The position numbers and the translations under genes were made by a program. From IMG/VR virus record IMGVR_UViG_3300028676_000003, positions 248,001-312,000 of that record: DNA of 64,000 bases; one strand, given 5' to 3'. The notes beneath the pieces were generated by a model that saw only the letters and a program-made list of their open reading frames with translations, had not been told where the DNA came from and did not search any database. Every line of letters begins with the position of its first letter. The first letter of the stretch is position 1. Shown here piece after piece: positions 737 to 58,992 of this stretch.

Positions 737-1861
737 ATGTTAGCAATACAAGAATATATCAAAAAACACGGAATAAATAAGGCAATTTCAGACTTTAATC
801 TAAAATCTAGAGAGTATGAAAACAAAATCTTATTGAAATACGACCAATTATCATCACCAACAATGATGGCAATGGCTGAAATGCAAGATTCTCGTGGTAT
901 TATCCTTGAAAAAGGAACTTGGAAGGTCTTATCACTTGCATTTAGAAAGTTCTTCAACTCAGAAGAAGGAAATGCACATAAAATTGATTGGAATACTGCC
1001 CGTGTACTAGAGAAACTAGATGGTACCCTTATACAATTGTATTGGGATGCACATAAAGGTAAGTGGTTTGCAGGTACTACAGGTACAGCAGAAGGTGAGG
1101 GTGAAGTGAATAATAAAAATGGTACTACATTTAATGACCTTTTTTTCCAAACAGTTGCTGAAAAATACAACTTGGATTTAAACAGACTTGATAAAAAATA
1201 CTGTTTTGTGTTCGAATTAACAACACCTTATAATATAGTAGTGAAGCCACACGGTGAATCATCTGCTACGTTATTAACTATTAGAAACCTTGAGACACTT
1301 GAAGAAGTTTGTTATGAAGAATTACTAAACCACGGTTCAGTATTAGGACTTCCAGTAGTTAAATCATTTGACCTTAATGCTAAGAACGTTGGAGCTTTGC
1401 TTCGTACATTCGAAAACATGCCATGGTCAGAAGAAGGTTATGTTGTTGTTGATGGAAACAATGATAGAATCAAGTGTAAAAACCCAGCTTATGTTGCGGT
1501 TCACCACTTAAAAGGTAAGTCAGCAGAACACAATATCATCACGATTGTTAAATCAAACGAGATTGAAGAATTTGGTTCTACTTTCCCTGAAAGAAAAGAA
1601 GAATTGTACAAGCTTAAGGCTAACTACGATATCCTTTTAGAAAAATTACTTGTAACTTGGGAAGAATTGAAATTACGTAAACCTAAGAATATCATGCCAG
1701 CCGAAAAGAAAAAATATGCGGCCGCTGTATTCGAAGTTTGCGAGAAACATGACTTAAAGCCATTTACAGGTTTATTCTTTGGACTAAACGATGGAAAGGT
1801 AGAAAGTGTTGAAAGCTTCCTTATGAACTACGACGATAAACTCTTATACAAGATGTTATGA
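737..1861 (+). CDS. RNA ligase, T4 Rnl1-like
   Basis: Motifs KFFN, EKLDGTLI (motif I), FELTTPYN.IV, EGYVV and RIKCKNPAY; preceded by a TACCTTTGT promoter at 709. Confidence 0.85.
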   Translation: MLAIQEYIKKHGINKAISDFNLKSREYENKILLKYDQLSSPTMMAMAEMQDSRGIILEKGTWKVLSLAFRKFFNSEEGNAHKIDWNTARVLEKLDGTLIQLYWDAHKGKWFAGTTGTAEGEGEVNNKNGTTFNDLFFQTVAEKYNLDLNRLDKKYCFVFELTTPYNIVVKPHGESSATLLTIRNLETLEEVCYEELLNHGSVLGLPVVKSFDLNAKNVGALLRTFENMPWSEEGYVVVDGNNDRIKCKNPAYVAVHHLKGKSAEHNIITIVKSNEIEEFGSTFPERKEELYKLKANYDILLEKLLVTWEELKLRKPKNIMPAEKKKYAAAVFEVCEKHDLKPFTGLFFGLNDGKVESVESFLMNYDDKLLYKML

Positions 1862-2798: not shown

Positions 2799-3004
2799 TC
2801 AAATATTAGTTGTACATTTGTACTCTAATTTAAAAACAAGTATTATGGCAGGTGAAATAATCGGAGAAATATTAGTTGGTGCAATTGAACTAGCGGCAGA
2901 AATCGCAATAGATGAAAAGAAGCCAGGATGTGGATGCGCAATTATCATTGCCTTGCTATTAATACTAGGTTTTGGAATTTATTACTTTAACTAAAAACAA
3001 AAAT

Positions 3005-4429
3005 ATGAAAATTAAACAAATTCTTGATGAAATCGCTGGTTTCAGTGGTAAATTGGATAAAGCGAAAGCCTTAACCAAATATAAAGACAATCAATTATTA
3101 AAAGATGTGATTTATCTTGCGCATTCGCCTAGGATTAAATTCTTTATTAAACAAATACCTGAGTATCAGTTCATCGAAGCAACAACTTCACTTGAAGACG
3201 CTTTAAATGACTTAAAACAAATCTCCGACAGATTTTACACAGGTGCGGCCGCTACAGAATTCCTTTTAGGTTTACTATCTTATACGGACCCTGATGATGC
3301 TTACGTAATTGAACGTATCATTGATAAAAATCTTAAGATAGGAATGGACACAGGTATCAATAAGGTAATCCCTAAATTGATTGAAGAAACTCCTTATCAA
3401 GGTGCTACATCATTCTCAGAGAAGGGTGCATCTAAGTTATTAGATAGAAAATCTAGAACTGATAAAAATGGAGTTACAAGTCATGTGATTTCACAGATTA
3501 AAGCTGATGGTTCTTACCGTAATGCAATCATAATTGATGGAAAGGTAGAACTCTTATCAAGACAAGGAGAAGTTTCAACTCTTACAGGTGCCAAGTTCTT
3601 AGATGAACTAGCTCAAATGCCTGACTGTGTTCTAAATGGTGAACTTACTGTTGATGGAATAGAAAACCGTGCAATTGCAAACGGAGTTGTTTCTAGCATC
3701 ATGGATATCACTCAGAAAGCAGAAGAAAGAGGTGAAGTAGAAACAGCTAAGAAAATCAAAGCCTTTACTGAAAAACACGGTGATATGGCAGAAATGATTA
3801 ATAGGTTACGCTTCACGGTTTGGGATATGATTAGTGTAGATGAATACTTAAAAGCAAGTTCAGATTTTCCATATTTGAACCGTTTTACTGGTCTTCAAAC
3901 ACTTTTGATTGAAAAAGCTTTCACAAATATTGAATTGATTGAAACTCTTTTTATTGACTCTTATGAAGAAGCAATGAATCATTTCTTAGACGCTCAAAAA
4001 AGAGGTCTTGAAGGAACAATCATCAAATCAAGTACTGCTGGTTGGAAAGATGGGAAACCAACTTACCAAATCAAAATGAAACTTGAAATGGATATGGACT
4101 TAAGAATCATCGGATTCAACTATGGTACCAAAGGTACTAAGAATGAGCATGTTATTAGTGTTCTACAGTTGGAAAGTGAAGATGGGTTATTGAAGACTAA
4201 TCCTGGTGGAATGACTGAGGCTATGATGGCTGATATCACTGAAAGACAAGATGAACTAATGGGAACAATCGTTCAAATTAGATGTTGCGGGTTATCTCAA
4301 ACAGATAAAGGTTGGTCAACACAACACCCAAGTATTGTTGAACTAAGAACAGATAAAGACTCTTGTGACACACTTGAATCTTGTATCGCTATTGAGAATA
4401 TGGCAAAAACACTAAACGTAAAAAAATAA
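3005..4429 (+). CDS. ATP-dependent DNA ligase (T4 gp30-like)
   Basis: QIKADG (motif I), LNGEL, FTVWD, EGTIIK and IKMK, with a C-terminal OB fold ending HP....R.DK. ATG at 3005 chosen over the upstream TTG. Confidence 0.9.
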   Translation: MKIKQILDEIAGFSGKLDKAKALTKYKDNQLLKDVIYLAHSPRIKFFIKQIPEYQFIEATTSLEDALNDLKQISDRFYTGAAATEFLLGLLSYTDPDDAYVIERIIDKNLKIGMDTGINKVIPKLIEETPYQGATSFSEKGASKLLDRKSRTDKNGVTSHVISQIKADGSYRNAIIIDGKVELLSRQGEVSTLTGAKFLDELAQMPDCVLNGELTVDGIENRAIANGVVSSIMDITQKAEERGEVETAKKIKAFTEKHGDMAEMINRLRFTVWDMISVDEYLKASSDFPYLNRFTGLQTLLIEKAFTNIELIETLFIDSYEEAMNHFLDAQKRGLEGTIIKSSTAGWKDGKPTYQIKMKLEMDMDLRIIGFNYGTKGTKNEHVISVLQLESEDGLLKTNPGGMTEAMMADITERQDELMGTIVQIRCCGLSQTDKGWSTQHPSIVELRTDKDSCDTLESCIAIENMAKTLNVKK

Positions 4430-5825: not shown

Positions 5826-6872
5826 ATGAAGAAAATGATTAAATTTCCGTCTATCGAGCAGTTTCGTACAATTAACGCAACTATCCTTAGACAATTCAAT
5901 TTCGTCGGTTTAGACGAAACGGGAGAAGCTATCTACGATACAAACCTCCCAAAACCAAAGCTTTGGTTCAAAGGTAGTGTAAAATTACATGGTACAAATG
6001 CCGCTGTTTGTTACAATACCGCAGGTGGTTTATGGGCACAATCACGTGAAAGCATAATCACAGTTGAAAATGATAATGCAGGGTTCGCATTCTTTGTGGA
6101 AAGTAACAAAGACGCATTCAACCAATTATTCCGTAAAATTCAAGACGAAACAAGTGTTAGTTTTGAACATAATACGGTAAGTATCTATGGTGAGTGGTGC
6201 GGTGGAAACATCCAAAAAGGTGTTGCGATTACAAACTTGCCTAAGTCATTTTTCATCTTTGGTGTGAAAATCTCACCAATTCGTACAAAAGAGCAAGAAG
6301 AAGATAACAAAGAAGTATCATTTTGGGTAGAGTCAAACTATTTAGAGGTTCCTGAAAATAGAATCTACAATGTTGACAGTTTCCAAACATATGCTATTGA
6401 AATCGACTTCAATAACCCTCAATTAGTACAAGACAAATTAACTGAATTAACACTTGCTGTAGAAGCAGAGTGTCCGATTGGAAAAGCTTTCGGATTCTCA
6501 GGTGTTGGTGAAGGTATTGTTTGGAAAACGGAATTGGATGGAGAGGTCCATAGATTCAAAGTTAAGGGTGATAAACACTCTAGTTCTAAGAGCGAGAAGA
6601 TTGTTAGTATTGACGTTGAAAAATTGGAATCAATCCAAAAATTCATCGAATATGCTGTAACAGAAAGTCGCTTCAAACAAGGTCTTGAAAATGTATTCCC
6701 AAATGAAGAACCTATCGAAATCAAAAAGATGGGTGAACTTATCAAATGGGTAGTTAATGACGTTATCAAAGAAGAGACCGACACAATGGTAGCTAACAAT
6801 ATCGAACCAAAAGAGGTTAATAAATACATCTCTACAAGGGTACGTGAAATGTTCATGGCACTAAGTGTTTAA
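5826..6872 (+). CDS. RNA ligase, Rnl2 family
   Basis: Motifs KFPSIEQF, VKLHGTNA, IYGEWCG, GEGIVW and FKVKG. Confidence 0.85.
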   Translation: MKKMIKFPSIEQFRTINATILRQFNFVGLDETGEAIYDTNLPKPKLWFKGSVKLHGTNAAVCYNTAGGLWAQSRESIITVENDNAGFAFFVESNKDAFNQLFRKIQDETSVSFEHNTVSIYGEWCGGNIQKGVAITNLPKSFFIFGVKISPIRTKEQEEDNKEVSFWVESNYLEVPENRIYNVDSFQTYAIEIDFNNPQLVQDKLTELTLAVEAECPIGKAFGFSGVGEGIVWKTELDGEVHRFKVKGDKHSSSKSEKIVSIDVEKLESIQKFIEYAVTESRFKQGLENVFPNEEPIEIKKMGELIKWVVNDVIKEETDTMVANNIEPKEVNKYISTRVREMFMALSV

Positions 6873-23424: not shown

Positions 23425-23428
23425 CTAA

Positions 23429-23507
23429 AAGATAGTTTCAGCAAGCAAACGGTTAAAAATTTGTCTCATAAACAAACTGAGTGGTTCAATCCCACAAAAC
23501 TATCTTG
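23429..23507 (+). ncRNA. CAGCAA-stem element (skipping-rope-like) enclosing a Met(CAT) anticodon arm and a T arm
   Basis: AAGATAGTT.CAGCAA ... TTTGT-CTCATAA-ACAAA, GTGG-TTCAATC-CCAC ... AACTATCTT-G. Confidence 0.6.
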
Positions 23508-23512
23508 AATTT

Positions 23513-30567: not shown

Positions 30568-30640
30568 GGTACCTTAGCTCAGTTGGTAGAGCACCGCACT
30601 GAAGATGCGGGTGTCGCTGGTTCGAATCCAGCAGGTACCA
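30568..30640 (+). tRNA. tRNA-Phe(GAA)
   Basis: CCGCA-CTGAAGA-TGCGG. Confidence 0.9.
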
Positions 30641-30700
30641 CAAATGTGACTGAGTTTTTCTATGGCTCACAAAGGGATGCATCCCTACATAGAAGCAATT

Positions 30701-30773
30701 GGTACTGTAGCTCAATTGGTAGAGCACTCGTCTGAAGAGCGGGGTGTTGTGGGTTCGAGTCCCACTGGTACCA
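30701..30773 (+). tRNA. tRNA-Phe(GAA)
   Basis: CTCGT-CTGAAGA-GCGGG. Confidence 0.9.
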
Positions 30774-33034: not shown

Positions 33035-33105
33035 TTGGTACTAGTTTAATTGGAAAAAACGGGTGCGCTGAGCATTTAATATGGGTTCGAGTCCCATGTA
33101 TCGAA
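33035..33105 (+). ncRNA. tRNA-like RNA with a 5-nt anticodon loop
   Basis: TTGGTAC/GTATCGA, D stem GTTT/AAAC, GGTGC-GCTGA-GCATT, T arm ATGGG-TTCGAGT-CCCAT. Confidence 0.6.
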
Positions 33106-33334
33106 CTAATTTCAACTGAAGATAAATGTAAGTATCGTGCTTAATAACCACGGAAACCTTGGTGAGGGGTCCATAGTCATCACTTATATCATTGCTAAGA
33201 ATGAGTATTTATTGTAAGATATTTAAAACATCATTTATTCGGCCAATGTGGTTGATTTATAAGTGATTAAATAGGGTGTAGAGACGTTTGATGCTCTACT
33301 AGGTATTCCACTTAGAAATGGATTGAAATTTTAA

Positions 33335-33533: not shown

Positions 33534-33618
33534 GGGAGTGTAGCTCAGTTGGTAGAGCAGGATGTATAGGAATGCATACTTTAAATCTGTGTCAATGGTT
33601 CGATTCCATTCACTCTTA
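33534..33618 (+). ncRNA. tRNA-like RNA with an enlarged anticodon arm
   Basis: Canonical D arm (AGCTCAGTTGGTAGAGC) and T arm; about 20 nt in the anticodon-loop position. Confidence 0.6.
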
Positions 33619-33627
33619 CAAAATATT

Positions 33628-34104: not shown

Positions 34105-34902
34105 ATGAGAACAAGAGTAGCACCGTCACCAACTGGAATTTTCCATTTGGGAACACTTAGAACAGCATTATTAAACTATTTACTGGCTAAGGCAAACGGT
34201 GGTGATTTCATTCTCCGTATTGATGATACCGATGTAGTTAGAAATGATGATAAATACATAGATTATATCTATGACCAAATGAAACACTTTGGCCTTAATC
34301 ATGACCTAACGTTTAAACAGTCAGATAGACTAGCACGATATGCAGAAGTTGCCAATAAGATTGGTTTTGCTTCACCTGATGGAATAAAGTTGAATATGGG
34401 TGACTATGATATGGTTATTCTTAGAACAAATGGATATCCAACATATAACTTTGCAAGTATTCTTGATGATTATGACTACGATATCACTGATTTTGTCAGA
34501 GGTGTAGACCACATCAACAATCTAGATAAACAAAAACATATTTGGGACTTGATTGCAAGTGTTTATGGTGATAAGCCTTTTCCAAATGTAATTCATGCTG
34601 GATTGTTATTTGATGGGAAGAGTAAGTTATCGAAAAGAAGCGGAAACGGAACGACAGCTGACTATGTTGACTTTGATAAGGATGCATTATTAAATTGGTT
34701 GTTTAAGATGGGTTGGTCTCATAAGGACCCGAATTTCGATAGAGATTTTCCTTTTTTACTGATGATTCAAATGATTGCTTTCTTTAATGATGGTAATATC
34801 ACGAAATCTAACTGTAAGATTGATAGACCAAAGCTTGATTTTTTGAATAAAAAACATAAAAACTTTAAGAAATTCAAAGAAAGTTTTGGTGAATTCAAAT
34901 AA
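34105..34902 (+). CDS. glutamyl-tRNA-synthetase-family catalytic domain only (GluRS/GluQ-like)
   Basis: RTRVAPSPTG.FHLGTLR, LRIDDTD, PTYNFA..DD..ITD.VRG.DH, KLSKR. 265 aa with no anticodon-binding domain. Confidence 0.85.
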   Translation: MRTRVAPSPTGIFHLGTLRTALLNYLLAKANGGDFILRIDDTDVVRNDDKYIDYIYDQMKHFGLNHDLTFKQSDRLARYAEVANKIGFASPDGIKLNMGDYDMVILRTNGYPTYNFASILDDYDYDITDFVRGVDHINNLDKQKHIWDLIASVYGDKPFPNVIHAGLLFDGKSKLSKRSGNGTTADYVDFDKDALLNWLFKMGWSHKDPNFDRDFPFLLMIQMIAFFNDGNITKSNCKIDRPKLDFLNKKHKNFKKFKESFGEFK

Positions 34903-37893: not shown

Positions 37894-38529
37894 ATGGCAG
37901 TAACAAAACCAACAGCGAAAAAAGGAAGCGTAGCTACAGAGCAAATCGTAGGGCAAGCGGCTCAACAAATCACTAAAGCAGTAGCAGAATTAGCAGGAGC
38001 TACAAAAACTATCGAAACACTTGTTTCTCAATCTGAGGAATTAACACTTTTGGTAGCTAACAAAGAAGAACAAATTAAAGATTTAGATGTTCAATTCGCA
38101 GAAAAAGAGCGTCAATTAAACGTTAACTTGGATTTAAGTTTCAAAGCTAACGCTGAGAAAATGGTAAGCGAAAATTTATCTGCAAATGGTAAAGTAGCTA
38201 TCTCTTCTACAGAATTGAAAGAATTACGTTCTGAGTTAGAAACTGTAAAATCAGGTACAGAAGCATTAGTGAAAAAAGAGACTGCAATCATTGCGTCTAC
38301 GTTGAAATCTCAACACGAGAATGAAATCAAATTGATTCACTCTGAAAACAAAGCTATTGCCGCTGAAAACGCTGCTAAGTTAGGTTCGTTAACAAAACAA
38401 AACGAGTTCTTAGAAGAGCAAGTAACTAAATTGTACTTACAATTAGACGCTGAAAGAGCGGCTGGTACAGAAAGAGCAAAAGCTGGTTCAATCGGGAACA
38501 TCACTGTTGGAGAAACAGGTCGTAAGTAA
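37894..38529 (+). CDS. coiled-coil hypothetical protein
   Basis: A/E/K/L-rich helical protein; promoter at 37833. Confidence 0.7.
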   Translation: MAVTKPTAKKGSVATEQIVGQAAQQITKAVAELAGATKTIETLVSQSEELTLLVANKEEQIKDLDVQFAEKERQLNVNLDLSFKANAEKMVSENLSANGKVAISSTELKELRSELETVKSGTEALVKKETAIIASTLKSQHENEIKLIHSENKAIAAENAAKLGSLTKQNEFLEEQVTKLYLQLDAERAAGTERAKAGSIGNITVGETGRK

Positions 38530-38589
38530 TCGTTGACAAAAAGAAAGGTCGTCTAAATCGTAATTGGTTTAGACACCACAAGGTATAAA

Positions 38590-38722
38590 AAAATTCGTTC
38601 AGCATAAAAAGCAATTCCAAACTTCGGGTCGTAGGTTCGAGTCCTACCCTCTCCACTAGGGTTATAATCGGAGAGGTAGCTCGGTCGGATTAGAGCAGAA
38701 GTCAGCAAAAAAAGCAATTTTG
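38590..38722 (+). ncRNA. circularly permuted tRNA (3' half precedes 5' half) flanked by 18-nt direct repeats
   Basis: 3' half ACTTC-GGGTC-GTAGG-TTCGAGT-CCTAC-CCTCTCC-A (38621-38655), 14-nt linker, 5' half GGAGAGG-TA-GCTC...GAGC-A-GAAGT (38670-38702). Confidence 0.75.
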
Positions 38723-38731
38723 ATACCCCAT

Positions 38732-38850
38732 ATAGTAGTCGTCTAGTGGACAAAGACACCGCCCCTGTATTCGTGTATGAGGTTCGACTCCTCTTTAGCA
38801 GTGGTGGTATGACGTAGGTGGAAACATTGGTTCAAATCCAATCTGCTGTA
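38732..38850 (+). ncRNA. Glu/Asp-type tRNA body with an ~50-nt insertion in the anticodon loop
   Basis: ATAGTAG/CTGCTGT, D arm GTCTAGTGGACAAAGAC; the CCGCC/GGTGG stem encloses a second T-arm (GAGG-TTCGACT-CCTC). Confidence 0.6.
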
Positions 38851-38884
38851 CAAAAGGTTCCTCTTGCCTTACAAGAGAATAAAA

Positions 38885-39013
38885 AAGATTATTTCAGCAA
38901 TCAAACAAAAAAAATCTATTTGAAAGAGAGCGGAGGGGTTCGACTCCCCATTTGTCTATAAGAGGTATGACAATTTGTTGTAACGGTAGCACTAATAAAA
39001 AAAATTAATCTTG
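38885..39013 (+). ncRNA. CAGCAA-stem element enclosing a permuted Gln(TTG)-like tRNA
   Basis: AAGATTA...CAGCAA, anticodon arm, GGGG-TTCGACT-CCCC, TTGTC-linker-GACAA, D arm TTGTAACGGTAGCA, closing TAATCTT-G. Confidence 0.6.
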
Positions 39014-39023
39014 ATTCTCACAT

Positions 39024-39094
39024 ACTTCTGTCGTCTAAGTGTTAGGATGCCCTCGTTGTAGAGGGTGATAGTGGTTCAAATCCATTCGGAAGTG
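39024..39094 (+). ncRNA. Glu-type tRNA body with a 6-nt anticodon loop
   Basis: ACTTCTG/CGGAAGT, CCCTC-GTTGTA-GAGGG. Confidence 0.65.
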
Positions 39095-39240
39095 CAAATA
39101 CTGACCTCCACTTCAGTAATTATTTCGTTTTTTAGAGGTGGCTCCCTTTCCACAATTGTGGATATAACCAAAAATTGCTGTGGCAGACCACGGGCATCTG
39201 ATAGGTCAACTATCTATACAGGGGGCGAAACTAAATGTTT

Positions 39241-39292
39241 TAAAATAACTCATCATTTATTTGGTGGGTTATTTTTTTTTACGTACCTTTGT
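39241..39292 (+). terminator. terminator-promoter cassette closing array 2 (duplicated at 55357-55409)
   Basis: AATAACTCATCA-TTTATT-TGGTGGGTTATT, T-run, then TACCTTTGT. Confidence 0.75.
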
Positions 39293-46055: not shown

Positions 46056-46404
46056 TAGAGCCATTTGGTTCTTTGAGTTGATACTTGGTAAAGGAATAAG
46101 GGGCCTAGCATTTTGGCCCTTTATCTTTGTACCATCGACAACAGTCGTTGATGAGGTTCTGCTAAATCACGAACGTATTCATTTAAAGCAACAACTCGAA
46201 ATGCTGATTATACCGTTTTATATATGGTATTTGATTGCATTAAGGCGAAAGGGTTATATGGGTATTAGCTTTGAAAAAGAAGCATACGCCAATGAGAGAG
46301 ACTTAGGTTATTTAACCAAAAGAAAGAATTATTCATTTTTAAAATATCAAAATGAAAATAGAAATAAACAAAATAAAAACAGTACCAAAGGGTTTAGGTT
46401 TTAA
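46039..46404 (+). CDS. HExxH-motif protein
   Basis: LNHERIHLKQQ ... ISFEKEAY. Confidence 0.65.
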   Translation: MLIVSDRAIWFFELILGKGIRGLAFWPFIFVPSTTVVDEVLLNHERIHLKQQLEMLIIPFYIWYLIALRRKGYMGISFEKEAYANERDLGYLTKRKNYSFLKYQNENRNKQNKNSTKGFRF

Positions 46405-47527
46405 TTTCTGCGTTTACGGTGAACCATCTGAAGAAATTCAAAAATGGTGTAAGTATTGGGATTTTAAAACAGAACCATCAGGTCCATATACCAATATTAT
46501 CCTTACAGATGATGTTGACATTAAAAATATCTTTGTTGGTCCTAAGAAATACCATTATATTGATGGTTTTAGCCCAAATCTTAACAAGAACCTACATGTA
46601 GGTCACTTATCAAATCTTGTATTAGCAAATGCGTTCCAACACTTGGGTCTTGGAGATGAATTTATCTCGATATTTGGTGATACGCTAAATGGTGAGGTTA
46701 CCAAAGATGAGGCTTATTACAATTTCCTTAAAATGACCAAGTTTTTTGGTTATAAGGTTGATAAAGAGTATTTTGCTTCTGAAATGAAGCTTGATGAAAA
46801 GCTTTTAAAAGACGGCCAAGGTGACTATGAAGGTTCAAAGGTATTTGACTTAGAAGATGAACAAATCGTAGGTATTAAATCCAGCGGAGCAACAACATAC
46901 TTCTATCAAGACGTAGCACTAGCTAATGAATTGAGTGCTTCTACCTTGTATCTAACTGGCTTGGAGCAAGAAAATCATTTTAATTCGCTTAAGAAGTTAT
47001 TTCCAAATAACAATCATATCGGTCTTGGACTTGTTTATCTTGATGGTAAAAAGATGTCTAGCAGTGAAGGAAATATCATTTATATGAATGAGTTCATTCA
47101 TGGACTTATGGAAAAGTTTAATCATGATGCTGGTGTTGTAGCTAATATTATTATTGGACAAATCCTTAAATCTGAGCCAAAGTCAAAGAAAACAATTGAT
47201 TCTAGTCTTATAGATAATCCAAGATTATCATTAGGATTATACTTGAGCTACACGTTAGCACATGTTAAGAGTTGTGGTGTCACAACCAAGCAGATTTATA
47301 AGTATCAATCTAAAAAGTTACAATTTGCTGAATTAAGAGCTAAAACAAACTTATCACCAAATGTCTTATTTGATGAATTGGTGAGCCATTGTAAACATAT
47401 CAACGCTTTATATGAGACTCATTATATCAAGGGGAATGAAGAGAACATTGAGTTGTTTTCTAATTTGATTTCTGACTTGGAGTTGGGTATGTTGAGAGTG
47501 GGTATGTATTCAGTAGAAAAAGTTTAA
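46352..47527 (+). CDS. argS: arginyl-tRNA synthetase (compact)
   Basis: FSPNLNK.LHVGH, KS.G.TTY..QD, EQ..HF, KMSSSEG, YL.Y..A; C-term LGM...G. Confidence 0.85.
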   Translation: MKIEINKIKTVPKGLGFNFCVYGEPSEEIQKWCKYWDFKTEPSGPYTNIILTDDVDIKNIFVGPKKYHYIDGFSPNLNKNLHVGHLSNLVLANAFQHLGLGDEFISIFGDTLNGEVTKDEAYYNFLKMTKFFGYKVDKEYFASEMKLDEKLLKDGQGDYEGSKVFDLEDEQIVGIKSSGATTYFYQDVALANELSASTLYLTGLEQENHFNSLKKLFPNNNHIGLGLVYLDGKKMSSSEGNIIYMNEFIHGLMEKFNHDAGVVANIIIGQILKSEPKSKKTIDSSLIDNPRLSLGLYLSYTLAHVKSCGVTTKQIYKYQSKKLQFAELRAKTNLSPNVLFDELVSHCKHINALYETHYIKGNEENIELFSNLISDLELGMLRVGMYSVEKV

Positions 47528-50837: not shown

Positions 50838-50910
50838 CGGGGGATAGCTTATATGGTAAAGCACTGACCGTTGGGGTCAGGAGAATGAGGTTCGAGTACT
50901 CATCTACCGA
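50838..50910 (+). tRNA. Pro-type tRNA body with an atypical anticodon loop (CGTTGGG)
   Basis: C1:G72, A73; CTGAC-CGTTGGG-GTCAG lacks U33. Confidence 0.6.
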
Positions 50911-51024
50911 CAAACACAAAACGGGTTAACCTCTGCGAACAGAAAGTACGAGGATGGAACAATTGGAAAGATATCGCTAGTTGCAAAGGGTTCGATTCCC
51001 TATAACCTGACAAAAGAATTAATC

Positions 51025-52955: not shown

Positions 52956-52963
52956 CAAAATAT

Positions 52964-53038
52964 TGGCCTATGGTGTAATTGGCAACACTACTGTTTTTGG
53001 TGCAGTCATTCAAGGTTCGAGTCCTTGTGGGCCAACCA
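52964..53038 (+). tRNA. tRNA-Gln(TTG)
   Basis: ACTGT-TTTTGGT-GCAGT, encoded CCA. Confidence 0.9.
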
Positions 53039-53042
53039 ATAT

Positions 53043-53113
53043 TGGGGATTGATGTAATGGTAGCATACTTGGTTTTGAGCCAAACTGTATAAGTTCGACC
53101 CTTATATCCCTAA
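53043..53113 (+). tRNA. tRNA-Gln(TTG)
   Basis: CTTGG-TTTTGAG-CCAAA. Confidence 0.8.
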
Positions 53114-53116
53114 CTA

Positions 53117-53188
53117 TGTCAAGTAGTTTAATTGAGAAAACTCCCTGCGTTGGGCGGGGCGATTTGGGTTTGAATCCCGATTTGACAG
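53117..53188 (+). tRNA. Gln-like tRNA with an atypical anticodon loop (CGTTGGG)
   Basis: TGTCAAG/TTTGACA-G; CCCTG-CGTTGGG-CGGGG. Confidence 0.55.
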
Positions 53189-53197
53189 CAAAGATAA

Positions 53198-53257
53198 AAA
53201 ATGATTTCAGCAAATATTATCATCAAACTTTTAATTTGAAACAGATATATCATTTTG
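53198..53257 (+). ncRNA. CAGCAA-stem element enclosing a Lys(TTT) anticodon arm
   Basis: AAAATGAT..CAGCAA ... TCAAA-CTTTTAA-TTTGA ... ATCATTTT-G. Confidence 0.6.
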
Positions 53258-53265
53258 TTCTTTTT

Positions 53266-57926: not shown

Positions 57927-58310
57927 ATGGTAGCAATATTAATAACATACAATAAATGGCTTACAGAGTCTAAGTTATTTGTAGTAAAAGAAGTGAAGAT
58001 GTTCGCAGGAATTGGACTTAAAGAGGCCAAGGATTTTGTGGACGAAATTGATAATAACATCCGTTTGGGTAAAACTATTTCTATTGGAAAAGGGAGTGAA
58101 ACACACGAAATACTAAAATTCTTAAAAGAGAAAGACTTACTTTCATTTGTGGAAGCTCATAAGACTGGGCTAAAGAAAGAAAATCATCGTGTGGTTGCTA
58201 AGCGTAGCAAGGAATATGATATAGCTAGGTCTTGGTTCGATTCTTTGCACCCAAAGAAACAAGCTATGATTCAAACGCTAATAAACGAAGAAAATGGCAT
58301 TTCAGGATAA
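57927..58310 (+). CDS. paralog 3, ribosomal L7/L12-CTD-like
   Basis: KL.VVKEVK.FAGIGLKEAKDFVD. Confidence 0.65.
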   Translation: MVAILITYNKWLTESKLFVVKEVKMFAGIGLKEAKDFVDEIDNNIRLGKTISIGKGSETHEILKFLKEKDLLSFVEAHKTGLKKENHRVVAKRSKEYDIARSWFDSLHPKKQAMIQTLINEENGISG

Positions 58311-58992
58311 ATACGGAAGAACCCTACATTTTGATTTTAGTCCTGGAACTACATCGGATGATAGAATAAATACAGAATGGAGAGAGCAGGTACAGAAGTT
58401 TCCTAAGCTGATTCATACTGAGAAACTAGACGGAGAAAACTCTTGTCTATCTCAATATGGTGTCTTTGCTAGGTCACATGCGGCACCTACACTACATCCA
58501 TGGGCTAACCACTTGAAAGAGAAGCAATCAGTAATTCAACATGACCTAAAAAGCATGGATTTTGAAATATTTGGTGAAAACCTATATGCTTTACACTCAA
58601 TCATTTACCCTGAACTTACAGCACATTTCTATGTGTTTGGAATTAGGGTCCTTGATAAGTGGCTTTCATGGGAAGAAACCAAGCAATGGGCTGGATTCTT
58701 TGATTTTCAAGTGGTTCCCGAATTGGGAATTCAAGATACAACTGAACCTGAACTAATAAAATCAAGGGTACTAGAATTAGGTAGTCAGCCAAGCGTATTT
58801 GGTTCACAACAAAATAATACTGACCCGCTTATTGATTGTACACGTGAAGGTATTGTAAGTAGGAATATAGACGAATACACAGTTGAAGGTTTCAAAGAGA
58901 ATATCTTCAAATATGTGAGAAAAGACCACGTTCAAACGGACGTTCATTGGAGTAAAACAATAACAAGAGCAAGACTAATACACGAATACTAA
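58294..58992 (+). CDS. RNA ligase family protein
   Basis: KY.RT.H..FSPG..SDD, TEKLDGEN, GENLYA.HSI.Y, REGIV, FKYVR..HVQTD.HW. Confidence 0.85.
   Translation: MAFQDKYGRTLHFDFSPGTTSDDRINTEWREQVQKFPKLIHTEKLDGENSCLSQYGVFARSHAAPTLHPWANHLKEKQSVIQHDLKSMDFEIFGENLYALHSIIYPELTAHFYVFGIRVLDKWLSWEETKQWAGFFDFQVVPELGIQDTTEPELIKSRVLELGSQPSVFGSQQNNTDPLIDCTREGIVSRNIDEYTVEGFKENIFKYVRKDHVQTDVHWSKTITRARLIHEY

What the first reader, a model, noticed from the sequence alone, without database searches (positions are those of the whole stretch)
38885..39013. Second permuted tRNA (Gln-like) inside a CAGCAA-stem element
The order is stem 5' arm + CAGCAA, anticodon arm, T arm, acceptor 3' strand (TTGTC), linker, acceptor 5' strand (GACAA), Gln-type D arm (TTGTAACGGTAGCA), stem 3' arm + G. 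It shares the permuted layout of 38590 with an unrelated sequence, so the permutation recurs. The pairing is more degenerate here.
Basis: partly seen in the sequence, partly recalled or inferred. Interest (0 to 1): 0.75.

Follow-up and report, generated by a model that had tools for sequence, protein, structure and literature searches.

The report
Phage tRNA mimic in conserved clamp
The flagged 129 bases are a real, conserved small RNA of a giant phage: a circularly rearranged tRNA look-alike held in a conserved stem. It belongs to a widespread family embedded in phage tRNA arrays that I could not find described, and it is most likely a tRNA mimic rather than a working tRNA gene.

Summary
Window 38885-39013 (+) has a 7-bp terminal stem (AAGAUUA/UAAUCUU), an invariant UUUCAGCAA, an anticodon-type hairpin, a T arm, an acceptor helix closed by a linker, a D arm and a terminal G.

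The re-permuted sequence scores 98.6 in ARAGORN, against at most 85 in 100 shuffles.
- **Independent model.** A covariance model built only from six homologues in other phages finds the element at 87 bits (E about 1e-18).
- **Family structure.** Across 32 distinct model matches, 94.5% of cells pair and 25 of 27 pairs show compensatory changes.
- **Same clamp, different cargo.** It encloses permuted tRNA bodies, normal-order bodies without an acceptor, an anticodon arm plus T arm, or an anticodon arm alone. Copies sit inside phage tRNA arrays on the tRNA strand.

The acceptor end is never free, and the anticodon differs between orthologues. The phage has no splicing endonuclease, RtcB, Ro/Rsr or reverse transcriptase, though it has three RNA ligases and a CCA enzyme. 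The best reading is a trans-acting tRNA/anticodon-arm mimic with YrlA-like topology, not a decoding tRNA that matures through a circle. Its function (decoy or tether in tRNA-centred phage-host conflict) is inferred.

The parts
38856..38877 (+). Upstream hairpin GGUUCCUCUUG-CCUUA-CAAGAG. Its 5' strand CCUCUU (38860-38865) is also complementary to AAGAGG in the acceptor linker (38960-38965).
   Evidence: Present upstream of all 7 type B copies. The variable base covaries in the 5' strand and the linker in all 7 (G-C, A-U, U-A); the hairpin 3' strand follows in 6 of 7, with a G.U in L148. Coordinates.
38885..38891 (+). Clamp 5' arm AAGAUUA, pairing with 39006-39012.
   Evidence: Helix 1 in A3 is 97.7% paired, and all 7 pairs show changes on both sides. 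Arms differ completely between copies, e.g. AAGAUAG/CUAUCUU, AAAAUGA/UCAUUUU, AGGGUGG/CCACCCU.
38892..38900 (+). Single-stranded motif UUUCAGCAA at the inner end of the clamp. The first U residues can extend the stem against the A-run.
   Evidence: UUCAGCA is conserved in every true family member of A3 and was required in every metagenome copy.
38901..38914 (+). A-rich spacer, variable in length and sequence.
   Evidence: Alignment A1; a near variant has an AA insertion at 38906.
38915..38927 (+). Anticodon-type hairpin UCU-AUUUGAA-AGA. The 7-nt loop has U at position 33, UUG at 34-36 (38920-38922) and AA at 37-38.
   Evidence: Homologues have 4-5 bp stems with 7-nt loops and covarying stems.
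38928..38934 (+). Variable-loop-like joiner.
   Evidence: Alignment A1.
38935..38949 (+). T arm GGGG-UUCGACU-CCCC.
   Evidence: A U-A to G-C compensatory change relative to homologues.
38950..38956 (+). Acceptor 3' strand AUUUGUC.
   Evidence: Pairs with 38969-38975 at 6 of 7 positions, with one U.U. The sequence is entirely different from the homologues' CAUGUCC/GGGCGUG but still paired.
38957..38968 (+). Linker UAUAAGAGGUAU closing the acceptor helix.
   Evidence: AGAGGU is conserved in all type B copies.
38969..38977 (+). Acceptor 5' strand GACAAUU, followed by UG at positions 8 and 9.
38978..38992 (+). D arm UUGU-AACGGUA-GCAC, with A14, A15, G18, G19 and A21 in place.
   Evidence: Resembles the D arms of the phage's tRNA-Gln genes.
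38993..39005 (+). A-rich spacer.
39006..39013 (+). Clamp 3' arm UAAUCUU plus the invariant G.
   Evidence: G is present in 30 of 31 A3 rows that have a letter in that column, and in every true member.
38587..38725 (+). Paralogue ('element 1'): the same clamp around a permuted tRNA-Gly(UCC)-like body, broken at the 5' side of the anticodon loop.
   Evidence: ARAGORN scores 114.5 on the duplicated sequence. R1 gives 40.7 bits. Rfam YrlA gives a partial hit of 29.3 bits.
23426..23510 (+). Family copy with only an anticodon arm (CUCAUAA loop) and a 4-bp T arm. It fills the spacer between tRNA-Val and tRNA-Leu.
   Evidence: 33.4 bits. Orthologues in G001, G003 and G004.
53195..53260 (+). Minimal family copy: clamp, UUCAGCAA and a tRNA-Lys-type anticodon arm UCAAA-CUUUUAA-UUUGA. 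It lies between tRNA-Gln and tRNA-Tyr.
   Evidence: 21.6 bits. Orthologues have wholly different but still complementary arms.

Best explanation
Window 38885-39013 encodes one copy of a conserved phage small-RNA family.

Architecture (shown):
- A 7-bp terminal clamp, extendable to about 10 bp. Its outer pairs tend to be A-U, R-Y and G-C.
- An invariant single-stranded UUUCAGCAA follows the 5' arm, and an invariant G follows the 3' arm.
- The clamp holds a tRNA-derived cargo through flexible A-rich linkers.
- In this copy the cargo is a complete cloverleaf in circularly permuted order: anticodon arm, variable loop, T arm, acceptor helix closed by a 12-nt linker, D arm. The chain is open between positions 26 and 27.
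- The RNA therefore folds as an L-shaped tRNA look-alike whose acceptor end is closed. This is the topology of the tRNA-like module of bacterial Y RNAs (YrlA), with a true 7-nt anticodon-type loop added.

Release (inferred from position): the elements lie within tRNA arrays, often 0-25 nt from the next tRNA on the same strand. They are probably released from the polycistronic precursor by the RNase P and 3'-end cuts that free the neighbouring tRNAs.

Function (inferred, not shown): the RNA acts in trans as a tRNA/anticodon-arm mimic.
- The anticodon arm is the only cargo part common to all forms, and it differs between close homologues. It would be the specificity end.
- The clamp with UUUCAGCAA would be a constant handle for an unknown protein.
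- The most likely role is a decoy, or a re-sealable pseudo-substrate, for anticodon-directed host nucleases or other anticodon-loop-binding enzymes. It would work alongside this phage's 62 tRNA genes, its Rnl1- and Rnl2-type RNA ligases and its CCA-adding enzyme.

It is not a gene for a decoding tRNA.
For: - **Structure and homology.** R1, built without the window, hits the element at 87.1 bits, and hits three more window copies.
- **Covariation.** On 32 distinct matches, 94.5% of cells are paired, 25 of 27 pairs have compensatory changes, 0 of 500 shuffles reach this, and slid controls pair at 47% or less.
- **tRNA likeness.** Re-permuted homologues score 110-126 in ARAGORN. The window copy scores 98.6, against at most 85 for shuffles.
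- **Invariant features.** UUCAGCA and the 3' G are conserved in all true members, while the arms change completely.
- **Cargo variety with the same clamp.** Permuted bodies, normal-order D-anticodon-T bodies without an acceptor, anticodon arm plus T arm, and anticodon arm only.
- **Closed acceptor.** Helices are 6-11 bp with loops of 3-18 nt.
- **Anticodon variation.** The triplet varies among close homologues sharing the same anticodon stem: GUA, GCA, GAA, GUG. The type A orthologues vary likewise: GUU, CUU, CCU, UUU.
- **Context.** In the 37 metagenome copies, every tRNA found in the same locus is on the element's strand, and 22 copies lie within 300 nt of a tRNA.
- **Phage toolkit.** Rnl1-like, two Rnl2-like ligases and a CCA-adding enzyme, plus many tRNAs with odd anticodon loops.
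[quoted passage not shown] Type A relatives give sub-threshold YrlA hits of 41 bits.
Against: - There is no expression or end-mapping data for the element. The RNA libraries gave only contigs from the upstream ORF.
- No partner protein was identified.
- The window copy is the most degenerate of its type and could be losing function.
- Predicted folding energy is no better than shuffles.
- The decoy idea rests on context and analogy only.
- The anticodon-arm stems are A/U-rich and do not copy the phage's own tRNA anticodon stems.
- A3 was fitted to the model and includes three non-family matches (tandem tRNAs), so its pair counts lean towards the structure.
Confidence: 0.6

Rival explanations
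1. It is a genuine permuted or split tRNA gene. Two routes are possible. In the first, the flanks are removed and the ends joined by a phage RNA ligase into a circle, which RNase P and 3' processing then open. In the second, RNase P and CCA addition open the acceptor loop to give a two-piece tRNA, held together by the clamp, that decodes.
For: - Re-permuted homologues are excellent tRNAs by ARAGORN, scoring 110-126, and element 1 scores 114.5.
- Many copies have a 7-bp acceptor helix with U at position -1.
- The phage encodes Rnl1-like and Rnl2-like ligases and a CCA-adding enzyme.
- M. smegmatis YrlA, which has a 7-bp acceptor, is cut by RNase P and receives CCA in vivo (PMC4201824).
- The extra stem leaves the body near position 26, close to where long variable arms of class II tRNAs emerge (my inference).
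Against: - Members with only an anticodon arm, or without any acceptor, are conserved with compensatory changes in their arms.
- Several acceptor helices are 9-11 bp and capped by tri- or tetraloops.
- The break point differs between types (26/27, 28/29, 31/32), and about 13 nt of variable spacer separates the clamp from the body, so no precise excision signal is visible.
- There is no bulge-helix-bulge motif, no EndA and no RtcB.
- Discriminator bases do not fit the anticodons: type A copies with GUU have U or C where the phage's own tRNA-Asn genes have G.
- The phage already has canonical tRNAs for every one of these anticodons.
Confidence: 0.13
2. It is a Y RNA of the YrlA type that binds the host's Ro60 orthologue (Rsr) and tethers it to another factor.
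For: - The topology is the same: a terminal stem, then T arm, closed acceptor and D arm.
- Type A relatives hit Rfam YrlA at 41 bits over the whole model.
- Bona fide Bacteroidota YrlA-like RNAs next to rsr score only 33-47 bits too.
- 22 phages with YrlA-related sequences are on record (PMC4201824).
Against: - There is no TROVE/Rsr gene in this phage or in four relatives.
- Only 20 of 401 sampled Bacteroidota genomes have one.
- The Rsr-linked motif is absent from the phage RNAs, which carry UUUCAGCAA instead. That motif is GNCGAAN0-1G in PMC4201824 and GGUGYCGUAGA...UACUUCG in the Bacteroidota loci.
- The finding itself gives no YrlA hit at E up to 10.
- YrlA lacks an anticodon loop.
Confidence: 0.08
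3. It is a cis-acting spacer element of the tRNA array. As a pseudo-tRNA/stem module, it organises folding or RNase P / 3'-end processing of the polycistronic precursor, and it has no function of its own after release.
For: Copies exactly fill gaps between tRNAs (23426-23510 and 53195-53260), and many metagenome copies abut the next tRNA by 0-25 nt.
Against: - An invariant 9-nt single-stranded motif, a conserved anticodon-type loop signature (U33, A37, A38) and full tertiary-contact nucleotides are more than a spacer needs.
- Most tRNA gaps in the same genome lack such elements.
- The type A and type B pair sits after a protein gene, not between canonical tRNAs.
Confidence: 0.12
4. It is debris: the junction of two tandem tRNA pseudogenes (a 3' part, a spacer, then a 5' part) with no present function.
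For: - Tandem tRNAs with short spacers are common here, and they give weak hits to both the YrlA model and R1.
- The window copy has several mismatches.
- The hairpin upstream of type B looks like a relic of a preceding T-loop, acceptor end and trailer. That fits an origin by tandem duplication.
Against: - The element is conserved at the syntenic site in phages whose flanking protein is only 63-69% identical.
- There are compensatory changes in every helix.
- The acceptor sequence is wholly replaced yet still paired in the window copy.
- No D arm lies upstream and no anticodon arm lies downstream. The flanks are the clamp.
Confidence: 0.03

Closest known systems
YrlA, the tRNA-like bacterial Y RNA (Rfam RF02553; Chen et al. 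2014, PMC4201824; Wang et al. 2018, bioRxiv 10.1101/312249)
   Same: - A terminal stem formed by the 5' and 3' ends.
- T arm, loop-closed acceptor helix of variable length, then D arm, in that permuted order.
- tRNA tertiary-contact nucleotides are kept.
- Sub-threshold CM hits for the type A homologues and for element 1.
   Different: - No Rsr gene nearby or anywhere in the phage.
- The conserved single-stranded motif is UUUCAGCAA, not GNCGAAN0-1G or the Bacteroidota GUGYCGUAGA...UACUUCG.
- It carries a 7-nt anticodon-type loop, which YrlA lacks.
- It is embedded in tRNA arrays.
- The cargo can shrink to an anticodon arm alone.
Circularly permuted tRNA genes of Cyanidioschyzon merolae and other algae, and of Thermofilum pendens (as summarised)
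   Same: The 3' half lies upstream of the 5' half, joined through a linker across the acceptor ends, and the re-permuted sequence folds as a cloverleaf.
   Different: - No bulge-helix-bulge motif at the junction.
- No splicing endonuclease or RtcB.
- Variable spacers between the closing stem and the body.
- Conserved family members exist that cannot form a tRNA.
- Phage of bacteria, not eukaryote or archaeon.
Two-piece (permuted) tmRNA genes (Rfam RF04321, RF01850)
   Same: The T arm and acceptor 3' strand are encoded upstream of the acceptor 5' strand. There are weak partial CM hits of 14-17 bits.
   Different: No mRNA-like reading frame, no pseudoknots and no G.U alanine identity pair. The RNA is only about 130 nt.
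Engineered circularly permuted 'nicked tRNA' used as an RtcR ligand (Hughes et al. 2023, PMC10159003)
   Same: The acceptor is closed by a loop and the chain is open at or near the anticodon arm. Element 1 (38587-38725) has nearly this design.
   Different: That RNA is an artificial construct with a 2',3'-cyclic phosphate end and no clamp. No RtcR or RtcB link is shown here.
Phage tRNAs that evade or replace targets of anticodon nucleases (PMC10264068; PMC11555353)
   Same: They lie in the same arrays, the focus is on anticodon-loop variation, and the phage carries an RNA repair toolkit.
   Different: Those are canonical, chargeable tRNAs. The present RNAs have no free acceptor end.

Membership tests
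YrlA / bacterial Y RNA | tRNA-like module in the order T arm, closed acceptor stem, D arm, enclosed by a stem made of the RNA's two ends | tested here: met
   YrlA CM aligns element 1 and the type A homologues over this module.
YrlA / bacterial Y RNA | Rsr/Ro60-binding motif near the 5' end (GNCGAAN0-1G, PMC4201824) | tested here: not met
   The phage RNAs have UUUCAGCAA. The Bacteroidota rsr-linked RNAs have GGUGYCGUAGA...UACUUCG.
YrlA / bacterial Y RNA | Encoded within about 4 kb of rsr (TROVE protein) on the same strand | tested here: not met
   No TROVE match in this phage or in four relatives. The positive control in Bacteroidota works.
YrlA / bacterial Y RNA | Rfam RF02553 gathering score (69 bits) | tested here: not met
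   The finding has no hit at E up to 10. Element 1 scores 29.3 bits and type A relatives 41 bits. Rsr-linked Bacteroidota RNAs also score only 33-47 bits, so this criterion is weak for this phylum.
Permuted tRNA gene (C. merolae type) | The 3' half precedes the 5' half, and the re-permuted sequence is a canonical cloverleaf | tested here: met
   Homologues score 110-126. The window copy scores 98.6, just under ARAGORN's default threshold but above all 100 shuffles.
Permuted tRNA gene (C. merolae type) | Bulge-helix-bulge motif formed by leader and trailer at the junction | tested here: not met
   By inspection of A1 and A3, the closing stem is separated from the body by unpaired spacers of 13-14 nt in the window copy, of variable length and sequence across copies.
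Permuted tRNA gene (C. merolae type) | Splicing endonuclease and a 3'-P ligase available | tested here: not met
   No PF01974 and no PF01139 in the phage. Bacterial hosts are not known to have EndA. ATP-dependent ligases are present.
Permuted tRNA gene (C. merolae type) | Circular RNA intermediate and a mature linear tRNA | not testable with these tools
   Only Logan contigs were available. No joint was seen at the element, which is uninformative.
Canonical tRNA | Contiguous cloverleaf with free 5' and 3' acceptor ends | tested here: not met
   ARAGORN and Rfam tRNA find nothing at 38885-39013 in the native order. The acceptor is closed by a linker.
Permuted tmRNA | Tag reading frame, pseudoknots and a family-level CM score | tested here: not met
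   Only 14-17-bit partial matches to the tRNA-like part, in element 1 and in L015. ARAGORN reports no tmRNA.
Retron ncRNA (considered because of stem + AGC + G) | Cognate reverse transcriptase | tested here: not met
   No RVT_1 in the phage.

The most novel reading that the evidence does not exclude
The family is a programmable set of acceptor-less tRNA / anticodon-arm mimics that giant phages encode inside their tRNA arrays. The clamp with UUUCAGCAA is a constant handle. The anticodon triplet is a fast-changing specificity module.

The RNAs would neutralise anticodon-directed host defences as decoys or re-sealable pseudo-substrates for the phage's Rnl1-type ligase. Alternatively, they would occupy specific codons or anticodon-binding enzymes.

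A more radical variant is that some copies, those with 7-bp acceptors such as element 1, are opened by RNase P and act as two-piece tRNAs.
Probability: 0.3. Interest if true: 0.85.

Novelty: new variant of a known kind. Interest (0 to 1): 0.72.

Why it matters
Circularly permuted tRNA look-alikes are known in bacteria only as the effector module of Y RNAs bound by Ro/Rsr. This is a second, apparently independent family.

- **Distribution.** It is found in phage contigs and in metagenome contigs from many samples, and its copies sit inside tRNA arrays.
- **A distinct handle.** It has its own invariant handle and keeps a real anticodon loop.
- **Modular cargo.** The cargo ranges from a whole permuted tRNA down to an anticodon arm alone.
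- **A testable object.** It bears on why giant phages carry dozens of odd tRNAs together with RNA repair enzymes.
- **Annotation blind spot.** tRNA finders and Rfam miss these RNAs, and tandem tRNAs produce look-alike hits.
- **Side result.** The rsr-linked Y RNAs of Bacteroidota fall below Rfam's YrlA threshold and carry their own motif.

Tried and rejected
- **Rfam.** Searches at gathering and at E up to 10 give no family for the finding; only chance-level hits such as PK1-TEV and CrcZ.
- **Folding energy.** Not different from shuffles, z = -0.36, so it is no use as evidence here.
- **Cultured-phage collection.** Only one match, and it is to a different downstream motif in LR756500.1.
- **Bacterial genome scan with the strict pattern.** 77 hits, all chance. 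A Chryseobacterium coding-region match dominates, and none has a tRNA-like cargo.
- **RNA-seq.** Only contigs were available. They cover the upstream ORF (X5, X17) or are colinear over the element (X18, probably DNA). There are no circle joints, but absence means nothing here.
- **Retron idea** (stem, AGC, G): dropped because there is no reverse transcriptase.
- **Rsr/Y RNA idea:** tested and not supported.
- **Splicing-type maturation:** no EndA, no RtcB, no bulge-helix-bulge motif.
- **Syntenic upstream ORF 37894-38529** (phrog_9325, unknown, coiled-coil-like): gave no functional lead.
- **Clamp outer pairs plus G** resemble the A1-U72 / G3-C70 / G73 signature of tRNA-Trp. I kept this only as a lead.
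- **Anticodon hypervariability:** seen, but other positions vary too, so I make no statistical claim.

Full report
**Setting.** The window is bases 248001-312000 of a 368.5-kb virus record assembled from a peat metagenome, estimated complete.
- All long ORFs run on the + strand, and G+C is about 34%.
- The window holds 40 ARAGORN tRNAs and the genome 62. They cover all amino acids and include an amber suppressor, 6- and 8-nt anticodon loops, A34 anticodons and tRNA-Gln genes with G at position 33.
- TAnnTTTG-type -7 boxes (for example at about 39283) suggest a Bacteroidota host. That is my inference from the sequence.

**The observation.**
- clamp 5' arm AAGAUUA 38885-38891
- UUUCAGCAA 38892-38900
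- anticodon-type hairpin UCU-AUUUGAA-AGA 38915-38927
- T arm 38935-38949
- acceptor 3' strand 38950-38956
- linker 38957-38968
- acceptor 5' strand 38969-38975
- D arm 38978-38992
- clamp 3' arm 39006-39012 and G 39013

In the native order neither ARAGORN nor Rfam sees a tRNA here. I re-permuted the sequence over all reasonable cut points. The best ARAGORN score was 98.6. The same procedure on 100 dinucleotide shuffles gave at most 85.0. Folding energy alone is unremarkable (z = -0.36), although the minimum-energy fold recovers the clamp, the T arm and the acceptor hairpin.

**Homologues.** The ORF just upstream (37894-38529) has relatives at 63-69% identity in other IMG/VR contigs, and the DNA downstream of each carries the same kind of element.
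- Pattern scans of viral contigs gave 14 distinct 'type A' and 7 distinct 'type B' sequences. The finding is type B.
- Re-permuted homologues score 110-126 in ARAGORN.
- I built covariance model R1 from the six non-window type B sequences, using the structure I proposed. It finds 38882-39016 at 87.1 bits (E 8.8e-19; E-values are rough) over its full length.
- R1 also finds 38587-38725 (40.7 bits), 23426-23510 (33.4 bits) and 53195-53260 (21.6 bits).
- Compared with its homologues, the window copy has replaced the whole acceptor sequence (GACAA/UUGUC for GGGCG/UGUCC) and one T-stem pair in a compensatory way. It has also acquired an A.A, a U.C and a U.U mismatch. It is the most degenerate copy but still under structural constraint.

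**The family.** I aligned 35 R1 matches from the window and 24 loci, 32 of them distinct.
- 94.5% of cells are paired, against 71% for shuffles and 47% or less when the partners are slid.
- 25 of 27 pairs show changes on both sides, and none of 500 shuffles reaches any of the five measures.
- Caveats: the alignment is fitted to the model, and three rows are not family members (tandem tRNAs).
- The clamp arms change completely between copies (AAGAUUA/UAAUCUU, AAGAUUG/CAAUCUU, AAGAUAG/CUAUCUU, AAAAUGA/UCAUUUU, AGGGUGG/CCACCCU, AGGUUCU/AGAACCU and others). UUCAGCA after the 5' arm and G after the 3' arm are invariant.
- Each related large phage has 3-6 copies.
- One metagenome scan gave 37 more distinct clamp-bearing copies. 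Every tRNA found in those loci is on the element's strand, and 22 copies lie within 300 nt of a tRNA, several within 0-25 nt.
- The strict pattern found only chance matches in 185,579 species' genomes.

**Cargo.** The same clamp encloses five kinds of cargo:
1. Permuted bodies opened at 26/27 (type B, the finding).
2. Permuted bodies opened inside the anticodon stem at 28/29 (type A). Two pairs of the stem come from the strand after the D arm.
3. A body opened at the 5' side of the anticodon loop (element 1). On the duplicated sequence it is a perfect tRNA-Gly(UCC), scoring 114.5.
4. Normal-order D arm, anticodon arm and T arm with no acceptor at all (for example L314 and L412).
5. Anticodon arm plus a 4-bp T arm (23426-23510), or an anticodon arm alone (53195-53260, loop CUUUUAA). 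Orthologues of these two have unrelated but still complementary arms.

The anticodon arm is the only part of the cargo common to all forms.
- Its loop keeps U33 and A37/A38 in most copies.
- The triplet differs between orthologues: GUU, CUU, CCU and UUU in type A, and GUA, GCA, GAA and GUG on one identical stem in a close subgroup.
- Acceptor helices are 6-11 bp and closed by 3-18 nt, several by tri- or tetraloops.

**What it is not.**
- *Not a decoding tRNA of the permuted-gene kind.* There is no bulge-helix-bulge motif. The spacers between clamp and body are variable. No EndA or RtcB is encoded. Some conserved members cannot form tRNAs. Discriminator bases do not fit the anticodons. Canonical tRNAs for the same anticodons are present.
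- *Not a YrlA in the strict sense.* No TROVE/Rsr gene is in this phage or in four relatives. As a positive control, I found rsr in 20 of 401 Bacteroidota genomes. In most of those 20, the best YrlA hit (33-47 bits) lies just downstream of rsr on the same strand. Those RNAs carry GGUGYCGUAGA...UACUUCG, a form of the published GNCGAAN0-1G motif (PMC4201824), not UUUCAGCAA.
- *Not a retron.* There is no reverse transcriptase.
- *Not debris.* See the covariation above.

**What it most likely is.** It is a trans-acting tRNA/anticodon-arm mimic. [quoted passage not shown]
- Release by the RNase P and 3'-end cuts of neighbouring tRNAs is inferred from position.
- The phage encodes a T4 Rnl1-like ligase (737-1861), two Rnl2-like ligases (5826-6872, 58294-58992) and a CCA-adding enzyme. 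Its tRNA set looks shaped by anticodon-loop conflict (compare PMC10264068 and PMC11555353).
- I therefore favour a role as a decoy or re-sealable pseudo-substrate for anticodon-directed nucleases or other anticodon-loop binders. UUUCAGCAA would be a protein handle. This step is inference; nothing here shows it.
[quoted passage not shown] That shows such topologies can be read by proteins.

**Expression.** Public runs gave only assembled contigs. A soil metatranscriptome holds a 437-nt contig inside the upstream ORF. A wastewater library, probably DNA, holds a colinear 246-nt contig across the element with an AA insertion in the A-run. No joints were reported at the element. This neither supports nor excludes circles.

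**Novelty.** Rfam 15 has no model that reaches threshold. Full-text searches found permuted tRNAs only in algae and archaea, and YrlA as the bacterial analogue. Three newly described bacterial tRNA-mimic families are different motifs. A 2023 catalogue of about 8,500 anonymous IMG/VR candidate RNAs may contain this family, but I could not check that. I rate it a new variant of a known kind.

Noticed in passing
window 38732-38850 (+): A tRNA by Rfam (36.7 bits) with a 51-nt insertion after the anticodon-stem 5' strand. The insertion holds a second T-arm-like hairpin (GAGG-UUCGACU-CCUC). Similar insertion-bearing tRNAs occur in relatives: L013 4556-4672 (52.4 bits), L012 1155-1269 and L015 3266-3390.
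   Followed up: partly
window 39133-39236 (+), then terminator 39242-39275: A conserved unassigned RNA-like motif (GGUGGCUCCCUUUCC...GCUGUGGCAGACCACGGGCAUCU-hairpin-AUACAGGGGGCGAA). It is 85% identical to part of the 462-kb uncultured phage LR756500.1 and is present in L013, L014 and L016. There is no Rfam hit. In L016 it is fused directly to the 5' part of a type A element.
   Followed up: partly
window 39024-39095 (+): A tRNA-like gene with a 6-nt anticodon loop (ARAGORN 'tRNA-???', score 101.1), 10 nt after the finding.
   Followed up: no
window 38856-38877 versus 38957-38968: The 5' strand of the hairpin upstream of type B elements (CCUCUN) can pair either with its own 3' strand or with NAGAGG in the acceptor linker. 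In seven phages the linker tracks the 5' strand in all 7, and the hairpin 3' strand tracks it in 6 of 7. This is either a possible alternative pairing or a relic of a tandem tRNA duplication.
   Followed up: partly
window 737-1861, 5826-6872, 58294-58992, 2972-4429; genome 230731-231099: RNA repair and processing toolkit: a T4 Rnl1-like ligase, two Rnl2-family RNA ligases, an ATP-dependent DNA ligase and a CCA-adding enzyme.
   Followed up: partly
window 34105-34902 (+): A 265-aa ORF holding only a class I Glu/Gln-tRNA synthetase catalytic domain (E 5e-45). ORF 46352-47527 has a weak ArgRS-like match.
   Followed up: no
window 33035-33106, 50838-50911, 52964-53189 and genome-wide: Paralogous phage tRNAs with non-standard anticodon loops: G33 in tRNA-Gln copies, A34 in His/Gly/Leu, an 8-nt loop at 33534-33619, and a CUA suppressor at genome 228804. 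This fits selection on anticodon loops.
   Followed up: partly
loci L282-L300 (Bacteroidota chromosomes, downstream of rsr): In most of the 20 rsr-positive Bacteroidota genomes sampled, a YrlA-like RNA lies just downstream of rsr. It scores only 33-47 bits, below Rfam's 69-bit cut-off, and carries the motif GGUGYCGUAGA...UACUUCG. Rfam's model under-detects Y RNAs in this phylum.
   Followed up: partly
window 52960-53087; 30591-30748: Tandem canonical tRNAs with short spacers give weak full-length hits to both the YrlA model and R1. A T arm, two acceptor strands and the next D arm imitate the permuted layout. This is a source of false positives for any permuted-tRNA scan.
   Followed up: yes
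family-wide: The outer clamp pairs plus the 3' G (A-U, R-Y, G-C, then G) resemble the A1-U72 / G3-C70 / G73 acceptor signature of tRNA-Trp, including this phage's own tRNA-Trp (ACGGCUA...UAGCCGU-G). The significance is unknown.
   Followed up: no
genome 225244-225311 (outside the window): A further clamp-bearing copy (AGAAUAG...CUAUUCU-G, with UUACAGCAA) directly after tRNA-Met.
   Followed up: no
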